IMG/VR virus record: IMGVR_UViG_3300032287_003113
Span: 62,001 to 126,000 of that record
Strand: one strand, 5' to 3'
DNA length: 64,000 nt
The notes below the pieces were generated by a model. The model saw nothing but the letters and a program-made list of their open reading frames with translations, had not been told where the DNA came from and did no database searches. Position numbers and translations under genes: made by a program. Below, in pieces: positions 3,367 to 56,111 of the stretch. Position 1 is the stretch's first letter. Each line of letters begins with the position of its first letter.

Positions 3367-5207
3367 TAGTTGACTTTCTTAATACTCTCGTATTCAGCAG
3401 CTAATTGAGCTTCCAATGAAAGTGTTGCTTCGCTTACACGGTTACCTTTGTTGGTAAAAGGGTTTGCGGCCTTGTTGGCAGTGGCAGGATCTTGACTCTT
3501 TTCACGATTCATGTCGTCACCTTGTGTGGTGATTGTTTTGATACTGGCATACTTGGGACGAGGCTTGTTGACTGCTTCGGGAGCATCAGCAACATCAACC
3601 TTAGCTTCATCAATGTCTTTGGTTTTGATAGCATTGGTGCCAGGAATCTTGTCGCCAATTGCGACATCGTCGTCTGCTAGCCCCGCTGTGAATGCGTTGC
3701 CTTCGTTGGGTTCTTCAGTGATTTCATCTGTGTTGAAAATTTGACCAAATGCATTGAACTTGTCTTTGCCTGACTTCTCTGCAGCAGCATCTTGTTGTTT
3801 GATATATTCGCCACGACTGACTTCGCTTAGTCCAGCCAATTTGGCCAGTTCATCCAGTTCAGACGCTAGTGAATCTTCTTCGTAGTAGTTACGACCTTGA
3901 CCTTTTAACAATGCTGATTTGCCTGGGATTTGACTTGCTGGCAAGTTGCCTGGAATACCCATTGGTGTCTTAGGAGCATCTTTAACGTGTGCAAACGGAT
4001 CAGGGCGATCAAATTGGTCCATTTTACTGGGCACTTGTGCGGCTTCGTCAGCGACCATTTTGCCATGATAACCCTTGATCTCCATACAGTCACGTAACAA
4101 CTCACTGCAATGACCTGTTTCTTTAAACACTTTCATGTCGTTACTGAGTTCAGCCAACATTTCGTCAACTGTCTGATGTTTTTCTTTTAACAAGTTAGCA
4201 AAGTTTACACCTTCAGTAAGTCTATGTGCTAGATTGTCCATGCTTTCTGCCACTGATTTTTTGGAATCTTTTTTTGCAACTGTTTTTTCAGCATCTGGTT
4301 TCACACGACCGAATGGATCATGACCCATTTTGTTTTTGCTGGAGAATGGCAAACTGTCTTTGCTACTTTTCTCTCCGGTACTGTGTTTGCTTGGACGACC
4401 GCGGCCACGCTTCTCACCTGTGTCGGCTTTCTTGGCATGCTTGCGTGGACGACCACGCTTGCCTTTGTTTTCATCATCTTTGTCTTCGTCATCATCACTT
4501 TGATAACCAGGATAATCTTTTTTAGTATGACGGGTCACACCATCTTTGTGACTGACTTCGCCGCCTTTGTGTGTGGTTGCTTTTTCTTCAAAAAATCTTT
4601 CGTCTTGCAACAGTTTATCTACTTGGCTTGTGGAGATATTGAACTCGTCGGCCACTTGCTCAATGGCTTCTTCTGGTTCCATTTCATAACCTTTTTGCTG
4701 ATAAAAAGTATCATTTAGTTGTGCCAATCGAGCACGGATTTTTTTCACTAACTCAACTGTTGGTTTTACTTTGACTTCTTCCATCTTGGTATGTTCACAA
4801 CTACCTTCGGTCATGCCACATTCGTTGCATGTGCCTTCTCCAACGTGTTGCGGTAAACCTTTGTGCTTGGTAGCGGCAAAGTCCGTGGCATCTTTTTTGC
4901 CCATTGATTTGGCTACCTTGGCTACAGCTGGACTGGCGGCCTTAGAACCTTTTTGTGCGGCGTGAACCATGCCCATGAATTTTTGTTGAGCTTGGCTAAC
5001 TGCCTTCTCTTCAATTTTACTTTTGGCAAATTGTTCAGCTAGGCGTTGCTGTACTGAATCAACTCCAGCAAGGATACTACCTTGTGCTTCAACGCTTTCG
5101 CGGATTTCTTTTACAAGAGCAAAACGCTTTTCTTCTGCGGTTGGCTTGAGTGCTTCTAGTTTGCCTAGAATACTGTAGATGTTATCGTGTGAATGATTGT
5201 TGCTCAT
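3366..5207 (-). CDS. Large charged low-complexity protein with AT-hook-like motifs; putative core/internal head protein
   Basis: 613 aa, E/K-rich; KRGRPRK and RGRGRPSK; AVSQAQQKFMG module; ELAKLAGL motif. Confidence 0.65.
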   Translation of the reverse strand: MSNNHSHDNIYSILGKLEALKPTAEEKRFALVKEIRESVEAQGSILAGVDSVQQRLAEQFAKSKIEEKAVSQAQQKFMGMVHAAQKGSKAASPAVAKVAKSMGKKDATDFAATKHKGLPQHVGEGTCNECGMTEGSCEHTKMEEVKVKPTVELVKKIRARLAQLNDTFYQQKGYEMEPEEAIEQVADEFNISTSQVDKLLQDERFFEEKATTHKGGEVSHKDGVTRHTKKDYPGYQSDDDEDKDDENKGKRGRPRKHAKKADTGEKRGRGRPSKHSTGEKSSKDSLPFSSKNKMGHDPFGRVKPDAEKTVAKKDSKKSVAESMDNLAHRLTEGVNFANLLKEKHQTVDEMLAELSNDMKVFKETGHCSELLRDCMEIKGYHGKMVADEAAQVPSKMDQFDRPDPFAHVKDAPKTPMGIPGNLPASQIPGKSALLKGQGRNYYEEDSLASELDELAKLAGLSEVSRGEYIKQQDAAAEKSGKDKFNAFGQIFNTDEITEEPNEGNAFTAGLADDDVAIGDKIPGTNAIKTKDIDEAKVDVADAPEAVNKPRPKYASIKTITTQGDDMNREKSQDPATANKAANPFTNKGNRVSEATLSLEAQLAAEYESIKKVN

Positions 5208-5209
5208 GT

Positions 5210-5794
5210 TTACTTTCCTTTTGCCTTGTGTACTTTGTTTTGGTTTGTGCCAACTGGACTGGTGGTGCCAACATTTTCTGCTGTCATTACGCCAGTGGTT
5301 TTTTCAGTAGCGGCAAAATCAAATTTGCGACTTTCCAATTCTTTGATCAAACTACCAATACGAAGTTGTCCGGCTAACTCTTGACCGCCTTCGTCAGCTT
5401 TTAACTCTTCTTCATCCAGCAAAGCACCTTCATGATCTTTGCCACGTGCTTCTGCTTCGTCTGTGTTGACTGCGTCACCTAAGGTACGTACACAGATCCA
5501 GTCTGGATTCAATTGAGCACGTTCTTTGATTGTTTGGCGGATCTGCGGAACTGTGACAGGGTATGCAACTTTGATGTCAAATGTCCAACACTCGCAAGGA
5601 CCCCATTGTGGGAATTCACGGTGTTCTTGTATGGGCAAACTTTTAACAGCACTGACGCTTTCTAACTGATAAGTTTCCAGTGCATGTTTAATGCGGTCCA
5701 TTACTTCCCCTTTGGGGTTAATGGTAGCTAGTTTGATACGAAACTCGTATGGCTTGTTTAATTCGGCGATGTAAGTTTGGAATGGTTTCATCAT
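5210..5794 (-). CDS. Hypothetical protein with T4 capsid-targeting-like N-terminus
   Basis: MMKPFQTYIAE compared with T4 IPIII MKTYQEFIAE; own TATAAATA promoter and SD. Confidence 0.7.
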   Translation of the reverse strand: MMKPFQTYIAELNKPYEFRIKLATINPKGEVMDRIKHALETYQLESVSAVKSLPIQEHREFPQWGPCECWTFDIKVAYPVTVPQIRQTIKERAQLNPDWICVRTLGDAVNTDEAEARGKDHEGALLDEEELKADEGGQELAGQLRIGSLIKELESRKFDFAATEKTTGVMTAENVGTTSPVGTNQNKVHKAKGK

Positions 5795-7120: not shown

Positions 7121-8595
7121 AATAGACCCCCATAGGAAGCTTCACTTAATGCCGCTGTACTAAAACTGGCACTAAATTCGTTAGCAATGTCTCTTGTTAA
7201 ATCACCAAATGCCGTTGAAATATCGCCGACTAAACTTCCAACTTGGTCCTTGATAAATCCTGATGCTTGATCAATCAATGGTTGTGTTAGCTCAGTTACA
7301 TAGGAACCAACCTGTTGCATAGCATAGGTGGCTGCCATGTTGGTCACTGTGGCCAGGGCCGCTTGAGGGTTTTGTATAGCTGACGCAATTAGATTAATAG
7401 TGGCTCCGCCATTGGGCCCAAGACCTGCGGCTAGTCCACCAATCAGTCCATTGGCCGCGGAGCTTACTACGCCGCCCACGATATTAGACGCTTGTGCTTG
7501 TATCTGTTGCTGTATTTGTGCGGCACTGGTAATGCCCTGTGTTAAACTGCCAAGACTTGGCACACTGAATCCACCGGCATTGACTCCGCCCACACCTGCA
7601 GAAATTGATGTGCCAGTACCAAACAATCTTCCAAACACACTGGGTTGTGCTGATGTTGTACCGGCACCAAAATTTATGGGTGCGGTTGCATCGGTGTATA
7701 GTGGACTAATGCCTGCCAGGTCGGTGATTTGATCTGGCGCACGGTTATATCCACCTTGGCCATTGTCTACCAGGTCTGTTCCGTCTCTTGGAGCAATAGG
7801 ACTTGGCATCTTGTCATAGTGCAAATCAATAAATCCGCCGGCGTTGTTGGCAGTGGTATAGCCTGTTAGATATTTTACTGTTTCATACTGTATGGTCATT
7901 TCGTGACTTAACAAACTGGTTTCGCCATTCACATGATCACCGTGTTTGAACGCAGTGATAGTGGGATTGACCAATTGGTATTCACTAAAATTCTTTTGAT
8001 ACAAGCTGTAAATTCTTATAGCTTGTATGTATTGATAGGCCTGTTGCCCATTTAGGTTGGTACCAACTGTGGGACGTCTTGGACTATAACCCCAATCAAA
8101 GCTGGGACGACTGGCATACTTGTGTGGAGTATTATAGGTGGCGTCAGCATAGTCGGGGTCACGAAAAAAGAAACTGTAGTAGTCATACCAGAAATTTCTT
8201 ACATTGTCGCTTTGGTCATCGTGGAATGATATTTGCACAGGATCATACTTGATGCTATTTTGCACAATGTTTTTACGATTGTAAGCATTGTGTGTTTTGG
8301 TGTCGATAGTAAACTTTGGTAGCGTGGCACTTTTGACCAACATGCCTAATTCTCTTGCTGGAGCATTGCCACTACCCATGCTTTTGTATTGCAAGGTTTG
8401 ATCGGAGATATTTGTAATCAATGGATTAAAATCAAATTCCACATAAAACAAAAATCCATATTTGGGACTTAGTCGGAAATTGTCGTCGGTGAATATTCTT
8501 GCCGCATGGCGGTAGTCATACATTTGCCCGCGAGGATTTGTAACTGTATTTGGGTAATTAACTTGAGACGATGATAAATGTTTATTAATGCTCAT
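7117..8595 (-). CDS. Tail-tube-fold protein (gp19/gp54-like) with Gly/Ala-rich C-terminal extension
   Basis: LVKSATLPKFTIDT...YNRK...KYDPVQISFHDD parallels the adjacent tube protein (VVDIKRP...YNSK...INFRDD). Confidence 0.65.
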   Translation of the reverse strand: MSINKHLSSSQVNYPNTVTNPRGQMYDYRHAARIFTDDNFRLSPKYGFLFYVEFDFNPLITNISDQTLQYKSMGSGNAPARELGMLVKSATLPKFTIDTKTHNAYNRKNIVQNSIKYDPVQISFHDDQSDNVRNFWYDYYSFFFRDPDYADATYNTPHKYASRPSFDWGYSPRRPTVGTNLNGQQAYQYIQAIRIYSLYQKNFSEYQLVNPTITAFKHGDHVNGETSLLSHEMTIQYETVKYLTGYTTANNAGGFIDLHYDKMPSPIAPRDGTDLVDNGQGGYNRAPDQITDLAGISPLYTDATAPINFGAGTTSAQPSVFGRLFGTGTSISAGVGGVNAGGFSVPSLGSLTQGITSAAQIQQQIQAQASNIVGGVVSSAANGLIGGLAAGLGPNGGATINLIASAIQNPQAALATVTNMAATYAMQQVGSYVTELTQPLIDQASGFIKDQVGSLVGDISTAFGDLTRDIANEFSASFSTAALSEASYGGLF

Positions 8596-51031: not shown

Positions 51032-51883
51032 ATGGAAAATGCTATTCAAAACCCTTTAGTCAAGTACTTTAGACAGCCGTCAATCTACTTAAAATTGCCA
51101 TCAAACGGTCAATATTGGAAAGAAGGGGCAGTAAATTTACCAGTAACTGGGGAAATTCCTGTGTACCCAATGACTGCCAGGGACGAAGTTACTTTGCGTA
51201 CTCCTGATGCACTCATGAACGGAGCTGGCGTTGTTGACGTAATACACAGTTGTTGCCCCAATATCACAGATGCTTGGAGTATGCCCAGCGTGGATGTGGA
51301 TGCTGTGTTGATCGCTATCAGGATTGCCAGTTACGGTGCAGAAATGCCAGTTGATACCAGTTGCCCCAATTGCGGTGCAGAAAACACCCACAATGTCGAT
51401 TTGAGTGTGAGACTATCGGGAATCACTTGTCCAGACTACAACAAAAAAATCAGTTTACCCGATGAGTTGCATGTAAAATGCACGCCGCAGGCATATTTCA
51501 GTGTTAATAGAAAAAATACCATATCGTTTGAAGAACAACGGCTAGTACAGGCCCTAGAACAAACTGATGAAAACTCAGAACAACGCATGTCACAAATTGC
51601 CGACAGCATGACCCGATTGATACAGATCAGCATAGACACAGTAACAGACAGCACCGAGTACATTGAAATGCCCGACGGAACCCGTGTTACAGATAAAGAA
51701 TTTATCAAAGAGTTTTATAGCAATGCTAATGGCAGCGTTGTACGTAACGTACAAGAACAACTGGCTGAAATCAACAACCAAGGCGCCGTCAAGGATCAAT
51801 CAGCTGAGTGCAACGAGTGTAAAACTGAATATAAAATTCCTATCATGTTTGACTACGCAAATTTTTTCGCAATCGGCTCCTGA
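51032..51883 (+). CDS. gp26: Baseplate hub / tail assembly chaperone (gp26-like)
   Basis: LKLPS.G, PMTARDE, D.DA.LIAIRIASYG, CPNC...CNEC, ends ANFF. Confidence 0.8.
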   Translation: MENAIQNPLVKYFRQPSIYLKLPSNGQYWKEGAVNLPVTGEIPVYPMTARDEVTLRTPDALMNGAGVVDVIHSCCPNITDAWSMPSVDVDAVLIAIRIASYGAEMPVDTSCPNCGAENTHNVDLSVRLSGITCPDYNKKISLPDELHVKCTPQAYFSVNRKNTISFEEQRLVQALEQTDENSEQRMSQIADSMTRLIQISIDTVTDSTEYIEMPDGTRVTDKEFIKEFYSNANGSVVRNVQEQLAEINNQGAVKDQSAECNECKTEYKIPIMFDYANFFAIGS

Positions 51884-52098
51884 CATTAGACAATGACGCC
51901 GTCGTAAAACTGTTGGAATCTTACGATAAAGAGTCGAGAGCCGTTAAAAAAGAAGCGTTGCAAATGGCCTGGTACATGCGAGGTGGGTTGACCTATAACG
52001 ATGCTATGGCACTGAGCTCATCAGAACGAGAGATAATTGGTGAAATAATTAAAAAGAACATGGAAACTACAGAGAAATCGGGATTACCATTCTTCTAA
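51853..52098 (+). CDS. gp51-like/GT-like chaperone C-terminal domain, probably made as a frameshift fusion to gp26
   Basis: No SD-supported start (track uses TTG 51913); AWYMRGGLTYNDAMALSSSEREII resembles the small post-gp26 proteins. Confidence 0.65.
   Translation, partial: LRKFFRNRLLTLDNDAVVKLLESYDKESRAVKKEALQMAWYMRGGLTYNDAMALSSSEREIIGEIIKKNMETTEKSGLPFF
51859..51868 (+). other. Candidate -1 ribosomal frameshift slippery site
   Basis: A AAT TTT TTC in the gp26 frame; -1 frame open from 51853 to 52098. Confidence 0.7.
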
Positions 52099-52099
52099 C

Positions 52100-52567
52100 T
52101 GATTTAAGATTAGCTACGCTAATCTATTGATTTCGCTTTGCTCATCAATGTTTTTCTTCTTTGTTGCTTTTCCGTATTATCCAGATTAATTGGTCACAAT
52201 TCACCGTATGCACGGTGAACATGATTGAGCATTATCCGAGTAGCACAGTCATTTATTATAAAGAGATTGTATTTACATACGCAGAGGCGGTTGACCGGTA
52301 CCCCTTACTCTAGCTTCACATATCAACGGAACCCTAGTGACCCGATAATAAATCCAAGTCCTATAAGCTGGGGTTGTATCTTTTTCACATAGCCCCGACC
52401 ATTTTTTGCCTTAAGTTAGCATTAGCCTTGCACACCCGAGCAACATCTAGACTGGGTATCTCACCAGTCCGCAACGGGAGTCGAGCTGCCTCGACCAAAC
52501 AGAGTGCGAATTCCATAATAAGAATATAACTTTGTGTTTATTGCAGAATGACTTTGAGTCGAGTGTG
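52100..52567. ncRNA. Candidate large structured non-coding element (strand uncertain)
   Basis: Largest ORF-free gap in the window; at least 8 stems and a 9-bp long-range helix 52251-59/52345-53. Confidence 0.55.
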
Positions 52568-52996
52568 CTAAATCTTGTTGATAATATGTGAGCCATGTAC
52601 ACGGACCTGTATGTGTCCGTTATAATAATCTTCGGTTTCTAAAACTCTGCGAGCAAATTGTTCTCTCGCCTCGATGTAACTACATTCAGATTTACTTTTG
52701 CAGTAGTATAGTATTTCTCTACTGAAATTGTCAACACCCAATGCAACCACATCTTTTGTTAATTCTGGACTGGAACCATAGTATGTTTGCCAGTCTGAAT
52801 CAATTTTACCACGAATCTTCTTGCGTTTCTTTTTACCATTTTTTAGTTTGACCATTCGGTAAGTGGTCTTGCTAAATTTTGCAAGTTTTTTGCCAATATA
52901 CTTCCGGCCGGTTAGGTTATTTGTGATCAAATAAACAAAACCAACACAATCTTCGGGTAGCGTTTCTACTTGAGTATTTTCGTAAATCCATGACAT
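52568..52996 (-). CDS. GIY-YIG endonuclease, T4 EndoII (DenA)-like
   Basis: GFVYLITN..TGRKYIGKK...SDWQTYYGSS...F.REIL...E...YYNG. Confidence 0.8.
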   Translation of the reverse strand: MSWIYENTQVETLPEDCVGFVYLITNNLTGRKYIGKKLAKFSKTTYRMVKLKNGKKKRKKIRGKIDSDWQTYYGSSPELTKDVVALGVDNFSREILYYCKSKSECSYIEAREQFARRVLETEDYYNGHIQVRVHGSHIINKI

Positions 52997-53042: not shown

Positions 53043-54812
53043 TTAAACAATGTCTACGTCAGTGTTGTAGCTGGTGTACCCGTTTTCTTTGACCACGTGA
53101 AGCGTGTTGTTTACCCGCCCTGCCAATTCATCCTTGTGCGACACCAACCAAATACTCTTGTTAGCTTCGCGACTCATCTTTTTCAGGATAGCCAGACTGT
53201 TTTCTACGCCTGAGCTATCCATACCGCTGTCTACTAACTCGTCGATAAACAACAAGTTAATGGGTTGATATAGGCTTTCCCAAACATCGCGGAAGCTCCA
53301 GCTCAAGGATAAAATCAAGCGATTGCGTTCTCCGCGACTTAGATTGTCAAAGTCCAAATCTCTACCTAACTCTGTAATGGCTACAGTCAAATCATTGTTG
53401 AACTTGACTGTGTGTGGTAAGCCAATACGGTCCAGGTATTGTCCCAAGCGGGCATTTAAATAACTTAAATTCTGATCAATAATACGTTTACGAATAAATG
53501 AATCTTTGTTGGTCAGCAGTTTGAGCAGGAACTCTTGATGTTCTCTAATGTTATTGAGTTCGTTGATCACATCAAAACTGACTTCTTCTACGCCTTGTGT
53601 TTGCATTTCTGCTATTTGCTCAGCATACGGATCTTGTTCAACTGCCTTGATTTCCAACTGTTGAATCAAGTTATCAACGCTTGCTTGATGATGAATAGCA
53701 TCCGACTCTTTGTCATAAAACGTTTCGGGCCGTGGTCCTAGCTTGCCCAGCCCATCGTGAGCTGACTGTAATTCACCCAGAGTGGCAGCAAAGGCATCCG
53801 CTGCTTCCTTTGCTCCAGCCAAGTCTCTCTGCTTTTGTCCCAGTACTGATTGGTGCTTCTCGTCATGGAAATCCTGTCCACAGGTATGGCACGTATGATT
53901 TTCCAACGAAACAAGTTCTGCTGATATCTTGCCAATCGTTTTTTCCTCACGGGAAAGGTCCAGTTTTGTGCGACCAATCGCCGACGATAGTTCATTGATA
54001 TCCTTGCGAGTTTGATCCCATGTCTTGAACGCTTGGTGTGCCTGAATCTCGGCCTGGATGTCAATTCTCTGAAGCTCTTCAATTCCTGTCTGTAATTTCT
54101 GTATATCTTCTGCATGTTTATTCACCCATAGCGTTTGCCTACGCTTCAACGCTTCGATCTGTTCTTCAATACGCCGGTTGGCATCGCCCACAGCCTTGAT
54201 ACGAAACTCTTCTTGTGTGATGGCATCTTTGGTTGCTTTGCCAGCCTCCTTTAGTTTGTCTGCTTTTTCACTTAGCAATGTAATACCAAGTAATTGCTCA
54301 ATTATAGTACGCTGGTCATTGGCTTTGAGTGCCAAGAATGGTTCTGTGTAGGTGTTGAGAGCCACAATGTGCTTGAACATGTCGTGACTCATGCCCAGCA
54401 TACGTTCTATTTCTTGCTGTGTTTCTCGGCTGTCGCCTTGTGCATCATCTGTGATTTCTTGTTCGCTATCGCCAACAAAGAATTTCATAGTGTTAGGTTT
54501 ACGTCCACGTTCTATCCTGTAGCTGACACCTTCTTTTTCAAAATCAATTGTGACCATCATGTTTTTGGCATTGGTCTTGTTGATCAAGTTATCTTTTTTA
54601 ATGTTAGTAAGTGCGTTGCCGTACAAGGCATAGCTCAATGCATTGATAATAGTGGTTTTACCTGTACCGTTACGTGCACCGGAGTCGTCTCCGCCTAGGT
54701 CTAAATTTTCACCCAACACCAGAGTCAAGTCTTGTCGATCAAAATTAACTGCCTGTGTGGTATTGCCCACACTCATAAAGTTTTTAACAGTAAGGTCTTT
54801 TATTTTAAACAT
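53043..54812 (-). CDS. gp46: Recombination ATPase (Rad50/SbcC-like)
   Basis: KNFMSVGN, NGTGKTT, CHTC zinc hook, LSRGE signature, LLFIDELVDSGMD, VSH. Confidence 0.95.
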   Translation of the reverse strand: MFKIKDLTVKNFMSVGNTTQAVNFDRQDLTLVLGENLDLGGDDSGARNGTGKTTIINALSYALYGNALTNIKKDNLINKTNAKNMMVTIDFEKEGVSYRIERGRKPNTMKFFVGDSEQEITDDAQGDSRETQQEIERMLGMSHDMFKHIVALNTYTEPFLALKANDQRTIIEQLLGITLLSEKADKLKEAGKATKDAITQEEFRIKAVGDANRRIEEQIEALKRRQTLWVNKHAEDIQKLQTGIEELQRIDIQAEIQAHQAFKTWDQTRKDINELSSAIGRTKLDLSREEKTIGKISAELVSLENHTCHTCGQDFHDEKHQSVLGQKQRDLAGAKEAADAFAATLGELQSAHDGLGKLGPRPETFYDKESDAIHHQASVDNLIQQLEIKAVEQDPYAEQIAEMQTQGVEEVSFDVINELNNIREHQEFLLKLLTNKDSFIRKRIIDQNLSYLNARLGQYLDRIGLPHTVKFNNDLTVAITELGRDLDFDNLSRGERNRLILSLSWSFRDVWESLYQPINLLFIDELVDSGMDSSGVENSLAILKKMSREANKSIWLVSHKDELAGRVNNTLHVVKENGYTSYNTDVDIV

Positions 54813-54821
54813 AGGTTCTTA

Positions 54822-56111
54822 TTATATACTAAAATCTTGATCTAGCCAAGCAAAATGAGCTCGCCAATTGGTATTGCGTCTTTGGTCCAGGGTTGTCAGA
54901 TATGTTTTTAATTTATCGATTTGACTGACATTATTTTTAGATGCTAAACTTGTGGTAGCAATACCTTGCATGGCCTTACGCTGTGCTTGCTGTGTGGGAG
55001 TAGTATCGGGCATCAACTTCAATATCTGGTCAAAGTCGTTGGCAAACACAGCACCATCGAACAAATATGGATTATCAAATTCTCCGGACGTATTAAAACT
55101 GTGAATGATGGGTTCTGCTGCCCATTCCCGTTGGAACCATGTGGCTGTGGCTGTTTGTTTGGTATTCCAGTGATTGATACGTTCCAATAACTTGGGCAAC
55201 GATTTAATAGTCAAGGCTGATACAGCACTATTAATGCTTAAGGATATCCATGGCTGATTCAACAGCAATTCAAAGTTACGTTGCCATTGTGCTAGGTCGA
55301 GCCCATAGCGAACATATTCCTGCTCACTGTCCCAACAATCTAAACTGGCAGTGATTTGCAGTTTCCATATTTTGTTTGACAGCACCAATTTTCTAAATTG
55401 CTGTAAGTATCGTTCAAATCGTGGTGTGGGTATGTTTAGATTGGTTACTACACTAAAAATTAAATCGGGATTGGCATGAGTTTGCCAAAACTCAATGCTG
55501 TCGTCTAGTTCGGTCATTAAAAACGGCTCACCACCTAAAATATGATACCGTTTGATTGCTTTGTAACGATCGTTTTCGTTCAAGTATTGCCATAGACCTG
55601 CAACCATTTGATCATAGTGGTCATTGTGTTGTGCTTGTTTGATGTCAAACGTTCGAGTGTGAAATGAATCTCCAAACTTTCTATTTTCTTCTTCCCACAG
55701 GCTGCTATGATGCGGCCCACAGTATACGCATTTCATATTACAGGTATTTTTAAAATAAACTTCCAGTATGGTAGGAGTAACAGTTGTGGATGATTCATCT
55801 GTGTCAAGCTCGGGCGGCACCAACCACCCGTTATCTTGCTGTAGCGTACTTTGTCTATCACTTAAGCCACCTGCATCTTCTACGTTTTTGCAATATTCAC
55901 AACCAGCCCTGGGCCACGCACCTGCAAGCATGGTGTTTCTAGCTGAAATTTTTTCAGGCAAATTATGAAATGATGCAAAGTTGTCGGCTGGTATGGCATA
56001 TTTTTCTGTGCGGTGACAACTGGCACTAGTACCACTGTTAAAGTAGACGGTGCTCCATGCCCATTTTAATAAACAAGCAGATTCTGTGCGTATGGGAAAC
56101 ACTTTATTCAT
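54822..56111 (-). CDS. Radical SAM protein with extra N-terminal Cys cluster
   Basis: CNMKCVYC (CxxxCxxC), LGGEPF, TN; N-terminal C..KW...SCH...CEYC. Confidence 0.85.
   Translation of the reverse strand: MNKVFPIRTESACLLKWAWSTVYFNSGTSASCHRTEKYAIPADNFASFHNLPEKISARNTMLAGAWPRAGCEYCKNVEDAGGLSDRQSTLQQDNGWLVPPELDTDESSTTVTPTILEVYFKNTCNMKCVYCGPHHSSLWEEENRKFGDSFHTRTFDIKQAQHNDHYDQMVAGLWQYLNENDRYKAIKRYHILGGEPFLMTELDDSIEFWQTHANPDLIFSVVTNLNIPTPRFERYLQQFRKLVLSNKIWKLQITASLDCWDSEQEYVRYGLDLAQWQRNFELLLNQPWISLSINSAVSALTIKSLPKLLERINHWNTKQTATATWFQREWAAEPIIHSFNTSGEFDNPYLFDGAVFANDFDQILKLMPDTTPTQQAQRKAMQGIATTSLASKNNVSQIDKLKTYLTTLDQRRNTNWRAHFAWLDQDFSI

What the first reader, a model, noticed from the sequence alone, without database searches (positions are those of the whole stretch)
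52100..52996. ~470-nt densely structured non-coding element directly downstream of a GIY-YIG nuclease
Seen: this is the only large ORF-free gap in an otherwise tightly packed window. Stems occur at 52107-25 (8 bp), 52126-49, 52200-19 (8 bp), 52284-305, 52370-96, 52450-69 and 52480-95. CCCG/CGGG (52435/52475) and TGCAC/GTGCG close a multibranch domain, a 9-bp helix 52251-59/52345-53 closes a second domain, and the minus strand has a GUAU-GUAA-AUAC GNRA hairpin. Short direct repeats flank two hairpins (ATTATCC x2, GCAAC x2). It begins right at the nuclease stop, so it would be co-transcribed on the minus strand. G-U pairs are split between strands, so orientation is unresolved. Inference: a large phage ncRNA, possibly a nuclease-associated RNA or ribozyme, or a structured DNA element such as an origin. 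I do not recognise it as a known family.
Basis: partly seen in the sequence, partly recalled or inferred. Interest (0 to 1): 0.85.

Follow-up and report, generated by a model that had tools for sequence, protein, structure and literature searches.

The report
Large structured phage RNA beside nuclease
The gap holds a gene for a folded non-coding RNA of about 400 bases, conserved in hundreds of uncultured freshwater giant-phage genomes and related to RNAs that carry a little-studied Rfam motif; its function is unknown.

Summary
Window 52105-52515 is a conserved, ORF-free, heavily base-paired element.

The functional strand is minus, the sense of the GIY-YIG gene. Three things point there: G-U 392 against A-C 78, GNRA and GNA loops, and a purine internal loop.

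The fold has a branched 5' domain and three hairpins. It has an H-type pseudoknot in a nearly invariant core and a second loop pseudoknot. Two direct repeats flank a hairpin, and two terminal hairpins close it.

Relatives fall into two types that share the 3' ~220 nt. In the other type the 5' 141 nt is Rfam RF01718 (Polynucleobacter-1), a motif of unknown function. In 2010 it was already noted downstream of this same GIY-YIG gene family. The window's type has no Rfam match.

The RNA always sits 10-55 nt behind a co-oriented gene. That gene is usually the GIY-YIG nuclease, sometimes a PDDEXK nuclease, and sometimes something else.

The two 7-mers in the repeats are identical to each other in 122 of 123 sequences, yet the family has 11 variants. 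This is unexplained.

Verdict: a new variant, and a large extension, of a known but uncharacterised RNA.

The parts
52105..52515 (-). Whole structured non-coding RNA (type 1), read 52515 -> 52105
   Evidence: nhmmer and blastn homologs and alignments A1/A2. Curated model: 87 pairs, 93.9% canonical, 57 with a compensatory change, 0/500 shuffles as high. No conserved ORF.
52430..52507 (-). 5' branched domain. P1 is 52504-07/52430-33, P2 is 52492-98/52479-85, P3 is 52475-78/52435-38, P3a is 52464-70/52449-55. This domain is specific to type 1.
   Evidence: Compensatory pairs: P1 3, P2 6, P3 2, P3a 4. It has no counterpart in type-2 RNAs, which carry RF01718 here instead.
52406..52422 (-). P4 hairpin
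   Evidence: 5 bp, 3 with compensatory changes.
52366..52400 (-). P5 hairpin with an A-rich loop (GAAAAAGAU)
   Evidence: 10 bp, 5 compensatory, 82 G-U cells against 4 A-C.
52335..52363 (-). P6 hairpin. Its loop (52347-52353) pairs with 52251-52257 to form pseudoknot 2.
   Evidence: 10 bp with 135 G-U cells, so it is possible only on the minus strand. The loop/strand pairing covaries, for example AUUUAUU/AAUAAAU against AUCUAU/AUAGAU.
52283..52327 (-). Nearly invariant core forming H-type pseudoknot 1. Stem S2 is 52323-27 with 52290-94; stem S1 is 52301-05 with 52283-87.
   Evidence: Across 140 unique sequences, S2 variants are GTTGA/TCAAC 51, GTTGT/ACAAC 36, GTCGT/ACGAC 9, GTCAT/ATGAC 9 and GTCAG/CTGAC 6. 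S1 variants are GAGG/CCTC, TAGG/CCTA and CAGG/CCTG; in type 1 S1 has a G-U that exists only on the minus strand.
52262..52311 (-). P8 long-range helix (52308-11 with 52262-65). It encloses S1 and the P9 hairpin (stem 52277-80/52269-72, GNRA loop 52273-76).
   Evidence: P8 pair 52311:52262 is A-U 22 / U-A 18. P9 loops are GUAA, GAAA or GCAA on the minus strand.
52229..52252 (-). Direct repeat R2. The 7-mer GGAUAAU in RNA sense is plus-strand ATTATCC at 52231-37.
52199..52220 (-). P10 hairpin between the repeats
   Evidence: Invariant in type 1 and fully compensated in type 2 (UUCACCG/CGGUGAA against CUUUGCCC/GGGCAAAG). In A4 helix 1, 6 of 9 pairs change on both sides.
52174..52197 (-). Direct repeat R1. 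The 7-mer is plus-strand ATTATCC at 52176-82.
   Evidence: R1 and R2 7-mers are identical in 122 of 123 parsed unique sequences, with 11 variants in the family.
52150..52173 (-). A-rich linker of variable length (a T-run on the plus strand)
   Evidence: Alignments A1 and A2.
52126..52149 (-). P11 hairpin with a conserved UGA/GAAA purine internal loop and an inner 2-bp stem. On the plus strand it is followed by a T-run, so it is probably also a terminator for the convergent genes.
   Evidence: All 8 pairs compensatory.
52107..52125 (-). P12 hairpin with a GNA triloop, followed by UUUAAA. It is the likely 3' end of the RNA and is terminator-like on both strands.
   Evidence: All 7 pairs change on both sides in A4. 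Flagged as terminator-like on the plus strand.
52568..52996 (-). 142-aa GIY-YIG nuclease gene (SegE-type domain only), directly upstream of the RNA in RNA sense
   Evidence: Pfam PF19835, E 1.8e-32. It is 74-94% identical in at least 594 IMG/VR stretches and 35% identical to P-SSM2 PSSM2_218.
51913..52098 (+). Convergent 61-aa ORF that ends 8 nt before P12 (context only)
   Evidence: No Pfam match.

Best explanation
**Shown.** Window 52105-52515 encodes, on the minus strand, a structured non-coding RNA of about 410 nt. From 5' to 3' it has:
- a branched domain (P1-P3a);
- three hairpins (P4-P6);
- a nearly invariant core folded as an H-type pseudoknot;
- a second pseudoknot between the P6 loop and a downstream strand;
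- a GNRA hairpin;
- two direct repeats flanking a hairpin;
- an A-rich linker and two terminal hairpins.

It belongs to a family carried by uncultured phages with T4-like genes, some on contigs of 220-357 kb. The family has two types that share the 3' ~220 nt. The other type carries the Rfam Polynucleobacter-1 motif as its 5' domain; the window carries a different, undescribed 5' domain.

**Inferred.** The RNA is made by read-through from the co-oriented upstream gene, because only 10-55 nt separate that gene's stop codon from the first helix. Transcription probably ends at P12.

It probably acts as a stable trans-acting RNA. The pseudoknot core would bind a conserved partner. The two always-identical 7-mers would engage two copies, or two sites, of one partner whose specificity changes from phage to phage.

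The small nucleases next to it (GIY-YIG, or PDDEXK in its place) are most simply mobile neighbours that exploit or mark a recombination boundary at a conserved RNA gene. T4 SegB does this in the tRNA cluster. They are less likely to be partners of the RNA.
For: **Conservation without coding.** Homologs are 72-91% identical and no ORF is shared. Indels are not multiples of three.

**Structure.**
- 87 pairs are 93.9% canonical, and 57 have compensatory changes. Shuffles give a mean of 35.6 and a maximum of 43; slid controls give 35-46% paired.
- For the shared 3' module on 51 sequences of both types: 96.8% paired, 21 of 24 pairs change on both sides, covariation score 0.678 against 0.186, and 0/500 shuffles reach it.
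- Pseudoknot stems show 5-6 Watson-Crick variants each.

**Strand.**
- G-U 392 against A-C 78 in minus sense.
- GNRA, GNA and UGA/GAAA motifs appear only in minus sense.
- RF01718 hits of 64-115 bits lie on the nuclease-sense strand in type-2 homologs.

**Shared module.** A covariance model built from type 1 alone finds full-length matches in every type-2 locus tested (E 1e-7 to 1e-22). It finds none in Melnitz, phiN3 or the P-SSM2 stretch.

**Context.**
- GIY-YIG lies 220-350 nt from the core in most of the 94 of 120 loci that carry it; in about nine an ORF is inserted and the distance is about 1.1 kb.
- PDDEXK_15 takes its place in 6 loci.
- Unrelated upstream genes occur in L110, L124, L155 and L163.
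- RNA type switches at least 9 times on the GIY-YIG tree, at least 5 of them forced by well-supported branches.

**Literature.** Polynucleobacter-1 is described as lying downstream of genes homologous to PSSM2_218, which is 35% identical to this GIY-YIG.
Against: - There is no expression data, so the transcript ends, processing and stability are all inferred.
- The single-sequence folding energy is not exceptional.
- Some helices carry plus-favouring wobbles, for example in a few S2 variants.
- No partner for the 7-mers was found within +/-4 kb of 129 loci or in the 64-kb window.
- A nuclease is present at almost every syntenic locus, which is more than expected for a purely selfish, sporadic gene.
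- The trans-acting role is a guess; a cis role in the 3' UTR is not excluded.
Confidence: 0.7

Rival explanations
1. The RNA is a functional partner of the adjacent small nuclease. It would be a targeting, scaffolding, inhibiting (antitoxin-like) or expression-controlling RNA for domain-only nucleases that lack a DNA-binding domain of their own.
For: - The RNA is co-oriented and directly 3' of a nuclease gene in about 100 of 120 loci.
- Two unrelated nuclease folds, GIY-YIG and PDDEXK_15, occupy the same slot.
- The GIY-YIG is only 142 aa, essentially the catalytic domain.
- Nuclease and RNA are both more conserved than the flanking gp46-like and baseplate genes.
- The two identical but family-variable 7-mers look like a specificity element.
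Against: - Full-length RNAs follow non-nuclease genes in L110, L124, L155 and L163. In at least 10 loci an unrelated 275-356 aa ORF sits between the nuclease and the RNA.
- GIY-YIG homologs in cultured phages (Melnitz, phiN3, P-SSM2) have no such RNA.
- RNA type and nuclease clade assort independently.
- The 7-mers vary at only four positions, far less than true guides.
Confidence: 0.12
2. It is only a cis-acting 3' untranslated region: a bidirectional terminator and insulator between convergent transcription units, plus structures that stabilise the upstream mRNA.
For: - It always lies at the 3' end of a co-oriented gene and faces convergent genes.
- P11 and P12 look like terminators on both strands, with a T-run on the plus strand.
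Against: - About 250 nt of pseudoknotted, nearly invariant sequence and two concerted 7-mers go far beyond what termination or 3' protection needs.
- The upstream gene varies, so there is no gene-specific regulation to conserve.
Confidence: 0.1
3. It works as DNA: a replication origin, a packaging site, or a site-specific recombination or homing target in which the two identical 7-mers are crossover cores.
For: - Identity between two direct 7-mers is what recombination cores require.
- The locus is a boundary of genetic exchange.
- Nucleases sit beside it.
Against: - The G-U against A-C asymmetry (392:78), GNRA/GNA loops and the purine internal loop are single-strand, strand-specific RNA features.
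- Pseudoknots covary.
- There is no GC-skew turn.
- No recombinase gene was found next to it in the ORFs scanned against Pfam.
- The segment between the 7-mers is only about 55 bp.
Confidence: 0.05
4. It is a decayed protein-coding remnant, for example the lost C-terminal DNA-binding domain of a longer Seg-type endonuclease.
For: Typical Seg proteins are about 200-250 aa, and this one is 142 aa (my own knowledge of T4 Seg proteins).
Against: - Homologs of the 142-aa protein are full length at 125-145 aa in hundreds of phages.
- All three minus frames are full of stops.
- No ORF is shared among homologs.
- Changes are compensatory in stems rather than codon-periodic.
Confidence: 0.01

Closest known systems
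Polynucleobacter-1 RNA motif (Rfam RF01718; Weinberg et al. 2010, PMC2864571)
   Same: - It belongs to the same family of phage RNAs. In type-2 homologs RF01718 is the 5' 141 nt of an RNA whose 3' ~220 nt (pseudoknot core, R2-P10-R1, P11, P12) is homologous to the window's element.
- It has the same position, directly downstream of the PSSM2_218-like GIY-YIG gene family.
- It has the same strand, and its function is equally unknown.
   Different: - The window's RNA has no RF01718 match at all, at E up to 10 with lax filters. A different branched domain (P1-P3a, then P4-P6) stands in its place.
- The Rfam model and the 2010 description cover only 141 nt. The description was based on 16 examples and noted that none had been detected in a sequenced purified phage.
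- The pseudoknots, the repeats and the total size of 410-550 nt are not part of the described motif.
T4 SegB, a GIY-YIG homing endonuclease gene inside the tRNA gene cluster (PMC2330249)
   Same: A small free-standing GIY-YIG gene sits beside conserved structured-RNA genes of a T4-like phage. The region behaves as a unit of preferential inheritance and recombination.
   Different: - Cleavage and homing are not shown here.
- The nuclease is nearly fixed rather than sporadic.
- It lacks a separate DNA-binding domain.
- The neighbour is one large RNA, not tRNAs.
HEARO / omega RNA with IscB, and TnpB guide RNAs
   Same: A large structured RNA is encoded next to a small nuclease gene in mobile DNA.
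   Different: - There is no Rfam match.
- The nucleases here are GIY-YIG or PDDEXK, not RuvC/HNH.
- The RNA lies 3' of the gene and has no hypervariable guide segment.
- The RNA also occurs without a nuclease.
Large ornate RNAs of unknown function found in phages and prophages (GOLLD, ROOL)
   Same: Size of 400 nt or more, multiple pseudoknots, a phage setting, a freshwater metagenome origin and an unknown role.
   Different: There is no sequence or structure match to their Rfam models. It is not next to tRNAs. Multimer formation is not tested.

Membership tests
Rfam RF01718 Polynucleobacter-1 | Match to the covariance model at or above the gathering score (37 bits) | tested here: not met
   There is no hit in the window at gathering score or at E up to 10 on 1.3 kb and 0.5 kb stretches. 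Type-2 homologs score 64-115 bits.
Rfam RF01718 Polynucleobacter-1 | Location downstream of a gene of the GOS11034 / PSSM2_218-like family, in the same sense | tested here: met
   The window's GIY-YIG is 35% identical to PSSM2_218, E 4e-18. The description is in the paper's supplement.
Rfam RF01718 Polynucleobacter-1 | Occurrence in fresh water/estuary samples and Burkholderiales | not testable with these tools
   Only IMG/VR contig names are returned, without habitat. The genome contigs pattern hits were chance matches.
Larger unnamed RNA family (types 1 and 2) defined here | Core AGGCGGTYRNCCKGTACC (plus strand) folding as a two-stem pseudoknot | tested here: met
   Window 52283-52327. Stems covary across 140 sequences.
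Larger unnamed RNA family (types 1 and 2) defined here | 3' module R2-P10-R1, A-rich linker, P11 and P12 | tested here: met
   Covariance model R1 scores the window at 159.8 bits and finds type-2 loci at E 1e-7 to 1e-22.
Group I intron | Rfam RF00028 match and flanking exons of one interrupted gene | tested here: not met
   There is no hit at E up to 10. The flanks are separate convergent genes.
tmRNA / tRNA-like | tRNA-like domain and tag reading frame | tested here: not met
   ARAGORN finds nothing in the window, and there is no Rfam hit.
Hammerhead ribozyme (P11 loop UGA...GAAA resembles its domain 2) | Conserved CUGA turn and a three-helix junction | tested here: not met
   The positions 5' of UGA form a covarying continuous helix. 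There is no Rfam hit.
Free-standing GIY-YIG homing endonuclease (Seg type), for the neighbouring gene | GIY-YIG catalytic domain | tested here: met
   PF19835, E 1.8e-32, residues 3-129.
Free-standing GIY-YIG homing endonuclease (Seg type), for the neighbouring gene | Sporadic presence among close relatives, and replacement or mosaicism at the site | tested here: inconclusive
   It is present in 94 of 120 loci. It is replaced by PDDEXK in 6. The adjacent RNA type switches at least 9 times on its tree. No empty syntenic site was seen.
Free-standing GIY-YIG homing endonuclease (Seg type), for the neighbouring gene | Site-specific cleavage of the allele that lacks the gene | not testable with these tools
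   This needs an enzyme assay.
Replication origin | GC-skew turn, iterons or an AT-rich unwinding element beside an initiator | tested here: not met
   Cumulative skew runs on without a turn. The only repeats are the two RNA-sense 7-mer units.

The most novel reading that the evidence does not exclude
The RNA is a programmable or specificity-giving partner of a protein, most excitingly of the domain-only nucleases encoded just upstream. The two always-identical, lineage-variable 7-mers would be the element that sets which nucleic acid or protein is engaged. That would be an RNA-nuclease system of a new kind in giant freshwater phages, or the pseudoknot core would be a new ribozyme.
Probability: 0.12. 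Interest if true: 0.9.

Novelty: new variant of a known kind. Interest (0 to 1): 0.62.

Why it matters
Structured non-coding RNAs above 400 nt with several pseudoknots are rare. Those understood so far (rRNA, RNase P, self-splicing introns, tmRNA, nuclease guide RNAs) do sophisticated chemistry or recognition.

This analysis makes three points:
- A 141-nt Rfam motif left uncharacterised since 2010 is only one alternative 5' domain of a much larger phage RNA.
- A second type, the one in this window, exists.
- The RNA sits at a recombination boundary beside interchangeable nucleases.

It also exposes a concrete puzzle that can be tested: two 7-mers kept identical within each molecule while drifting between phages. 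The RNA occurs in hundreds of uncultured freshwater phage contigs, some over 300 kb, so its role is likely to matter for an abundant virus group.

Tried and rejected
- **Rfam on the window**, at gathering score and at E up to 10: only noise.
- **tRNA/tmRNA scan:** none.
- **GenBank phage DNA search** with the region: no match.
- **Decayed coding region:** rejected by stops in all frames and full-length 125-145 aa homologs.
- **Plus-strand RNA:** this was my first reading, from a few G-U pairs in a plus-strand RNAalifold run. I rejected it after fair counting on curated helices, loop motifs and the strand of the RF01718 hits.
- **RNAalifold's pairing of GGTTG with TAGTG:** replaced by the covarying pseudoknot stem GTTGA/TCAAC.
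- **Hammerhead and k-turn readings of P11:** the UGA/GAAA loop is there, but the rest of either motif is not.
- **CsrA-type GGA sites for the repeats:** rejected because more than half of the sequences have AGA.
- **Partner for the 7-mers:** not found inside the RNA, in the 64-kb window or within +/-4 kb of 129 loci.
- **Bacterial genomes:** all sampled pattern hits were chance matches in unrelated genomes.
- **Literature searches** for a described nuclease-linked phage RNA of this kind found only the 2010 motif paper.
Full report
**Setting**

The window comes from a phage with T4-like genes. A 589-aa SbcC/gp46-type ATPase (53043-54812, minus) is about 50% identical to that of Pseudomonas jumbo phage PA5oct. 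A T4 baseplate protein lies at 51032-51883. Near-identical IMG/VR contigs are 220 and 357 kb long. The gap 52099-52567 lies between a plus-strand 61-aa ORF and a minus-strand 142-aa ORF that is a SegE-type GIY-YIG domain.

The gap's folding energy on its own is not unusual (z -1.8 and -1.1). All three minus frames are full of stops. The decisive evidence comes from relatives.

- The GIY-YIG protein retrieved at least 594 IMG/VR stretches at 73-94% identity.
- In about 45 of the 80 loci kept, blastn found the gap sequence at 72-91% identity right behind that gene, with no shared ORF.
- The nuclease and the gap are better conserved than the flanking gp46-like (54-90%) and baseplate (35-69%) proteins.

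A curated model on 42 minus-sense sequences (A2) has 87 pairs. They are 93.9% canonical, and 57 have a change on both sides. None of 500 column shuffles reaches this (mean 35.6, maximum 43). Sliding the partners drops pairing to 35-46%.

**Strand**

A first plus-strand RNAalifold run suggested plus. This was an artefact of predicting on that strand. On curated helices the minus sense has 392 G-U cells against 78 A-C. P6, with 135 G-U cells, cannot form on the plus strand.

Only the minus strand carries known RNA motifs:
- P9 has GUAA, GAAA or GCAA tetraloops.
- P12 has a GNA triloop.
- P11 has a UGA/GAAA purine internal loop.
- Single-stranded runs are A-rich.

The Rfam hits described below are also on this strand. 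The RNA is therefore co-oriented with the nuclease gene and begins a few tens of bases after its stop codon.

**Anatomy (RNA sense, window coordinates)**

| Element | Coordinates |
|---|---|
| P1 | 52504-07 / 52430-33; closes a domain holding P2, P3 and P3a |
| P2 | 52492-98 / 52479-85 |
| P3 | 52475-78 / 52435-38 |
| P3a | 52464-70 / 52449-55 |
| P4 | 52418-22 / 52406-10 |
| P5 | 52387-400 / 52366-77 |
| P6 | 52354-63 / 52335-45 |
| Pseudoknot 1, stem S2 | 52323-27 with 52290-94 |
| Pseudoknot 1, stem S1 | 52301-05 with 52283-87 |
| P8 | 52308-11 with 52262-65 |
| P9 | 52277-80 / 52269-72 |
| Pseudoknot 2 | P6 loop 52347-53 with 52251-57 |
| Repeat R2 | 52229-52 |
| P10 | 52199-220 |
| Repeat R1 | 52174-97 |
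| A-rich linker | 52150-73 |
| P11 | 52126-49 |
| P12 | 52107-25 |

Pseudoknot 1 sits in a stretch of about 60 nt that is almost invariant. Its stems are proven by variants across 140 unique family members. S2 has GTTGA/TCAAC 51, GTTGT/ACAAC 36, GTCGT/ACGAC 9, GTCAT/ATGAC 9 and GTCAG/CTGAC 6. S1 has GAGG/CCTC, TAGG/CCTA and CAGG/CCTG.

**Family and the link to a known motif**

Profile searches showed that many loci match only the 3' half of the RNA. Aligning them revealed a second type. It has the same core, repeats and terminal hairpins. Its P10 is fully compensated (CUUUGCCC/GGGCAAAG instead of UUCACCG/CGGUGAA), and its 5' part is entirely different.

The core pattern occurs in more than 120 further IMG/VR stretches. 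Of 140 unique sequences, 74 are type 2, 51 are type 1 (the window's type) and the rest are divergent.

Rfam finds RF01718 (Polynucleobacter-1 RNA) as the first 141 nt of every type-2 RNA tested. Scores are 64-115 bits against a gathering score of 37. The hits lie on the nuclease-sense strand, 10-55 nt after the upstream stop codon. The window's RNA has no such match even at E up to 10.

A covariance model built from type-1 3' modules alone recovers full-length matches in all type-2 loci tested (E 1e-7 to 1e-22). It recovers none in Melnitz, phiN3 or the P-SSM2 region. On that 51-sequence alignment, 96.8% of cells pair, 21 of 24 pairs change on both sides, and the covariation score is 0.678 against 0.186 in shuffles.

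The only paper in the library that mentions the motif is Weinberg et al. 2010. It lists the motif with 16 examples from Burkholderiales and fresh water/estuary. Its supplement says:
- the 3' half is not always detected;
- most examples lie downstream of genes of family GOS11034, with possible homology to PSSM2_218 of cyanophage P-SSM2;
- none was found in a sequenced purified phage.

PSSM2_218, annotated 'NAD synthetase', is 35% identical to the window's GIY-YIG (E 4e-18). The gene-RNA association was therefore seen in 2010. The described motif, however, is only one alternative 5' domain of an RNA of 410-550 nt.

**Relation to the nuclease**

- In 94 of 120 pattern loci a GIY-YIG gene lies near the core, in most 220-350 nt away and running the opposite way to the plus-strand pattern, that is co-oriented with the RNA.
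- In about nine of these, and in several loci of the first set, an unrelated ORF of 275-356 aa without a Pfam match sits between nuclease and RNA, so the distance is about 1.1 kb.
- In six loci a 168-176 aa PDDEXK_15 nuclease takes the place of the GIY-YIG.
- Full or near-full RNAs also follow quite different genes in L110, L124, L155 and L163.
- Cultured phages with GIY-YIG homologs lack the RNA.
- On a tree of 106 GIY-YIG proteins the adjacent RNA type changes at least 9 times, at least 5 of them forced by well-supported branches. The junction between nuclease and RNA is thus a frequent recombination point.

I read this as an autonomous RNA gene that is always placed at the 3' end of a co-oriented gene, so probably made by read-through. 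Mobile nucleases are its usual but not obligatory neighbours. This resembles T4 segB in the tRNA cluster and the finding that nuclease genes mark exchange boundaries between phages (PMC10055350, listed). A true RNA-nuclease partnership is not excluded; I give it about 0.12.

**An unexplained feature**

Each repeat contains a 7-mer, RGAYRAN in RNA sense (GGAUAAU in the window). In 122 of 123 parsed unique sequences the two 7-mers of one RNA are identical. The family nevertheless has 11 variants, 8 of them within type 1 and 7 within type 2.

No column inside the RNA covaries with them. The complement is not enriched in the window. No positionally conserved complement lies within +/-4 kb of 129 loci. 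Independent drift would have produced many unequal pairs. Some partner that reads both sites, or a copying process, must enforce the identity. I could not identify it.

**What it is not**

It is not a tRNA or tmRNA, not a group I intron or any other Rfam family, and not a hammerhead despite the P11 loop. It is not a coding remnant. It shows no sign of being an origin.

**Verdict**

The interpretation as a large phage non-coding RNA is supported, and the strand is resolved. The element is a new variant, and a substantial enlargement, of a known but uncharacterised RNA family. Its function remains open.

Noticed in passing
L120:3893-4423, L131:3963-4484, L134:2614-3126, L149:9348-9854, L187:9985-10506, L087:5439-5954: A 168-176 aa PDDEXK_15 (PF24608) nuclease replaces the GIY-YIG gene at the same position directly upstream of the RNA. 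This is a swap between unrelated nuclease folds. Five of the six were scanned against Pfam; L187 is assigned by its close sequence similarity to the others.
   Followed up: partly
L009:4365-5435, L037:4428-5255, L004:4440-5453: In a subset of loci an ORF of 275-356 aa with no Pfam match is inserted between the GIY-YIG gene and the RNA.
   Followed up: partly
L163:3911-4304 and 5169-5240: A viral contig that also carries a Polynucleobacter-1-type RNA (8395-8551) encodes a permuted/alpha-type tmRNA (RF04321 92.5 bits, RF01849 65.1 bits) and a tRNA.
   Followed up: no
L001 about 4640-4710 and L012 (RNA between R2 and the pseudoknot core): Four or five tandem units of the type CTATAAT-N3-4 are inserted inside the RNA in two loci. 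They look like stacked -10 boxes or protein-binding repeats.
   Followed up: no
window 52568-52996 and GenBank records such as NC_006883 PSSM2_218, KR052482 PHIN3_314: Homologs of this GIY-YIG nuclease are widely annotated as 'NAD synthetase' in cyanophage and rhizobiophage records. This looks like a propagated misannotation.
   Followed up: partly
window 54822-56111 (minus): A 429-aa ORF next to the gp46-like gene has only a weak, sub-threshold radical SAM match (E 2e-5, 25 bits against a cut-off of 29.5). An SbcD/gp47-type gene would be expected beside gp46.
   Followed up: no
L026:about 4640-4690; L015, L066, L070, L179 (P3 domain): There are lineage-specific insertions within the RNA. L026 has about 41 nt just 5' of the P9 hairpin. 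Four loci have an extra hairpin of about 20 nt between P3a and the 3' strand of P3. The fold tolerates expansion at these points.
   Followed up: no
window 52176-52192 (R1): In RNA sense the R1 7-mer and the four bases before it form a self-complementary octamer (AUCUAGAU, or AUCUGGAU with G-U). It could let two RNAs pair with each other. R2 lacks this.
   Followed up: no
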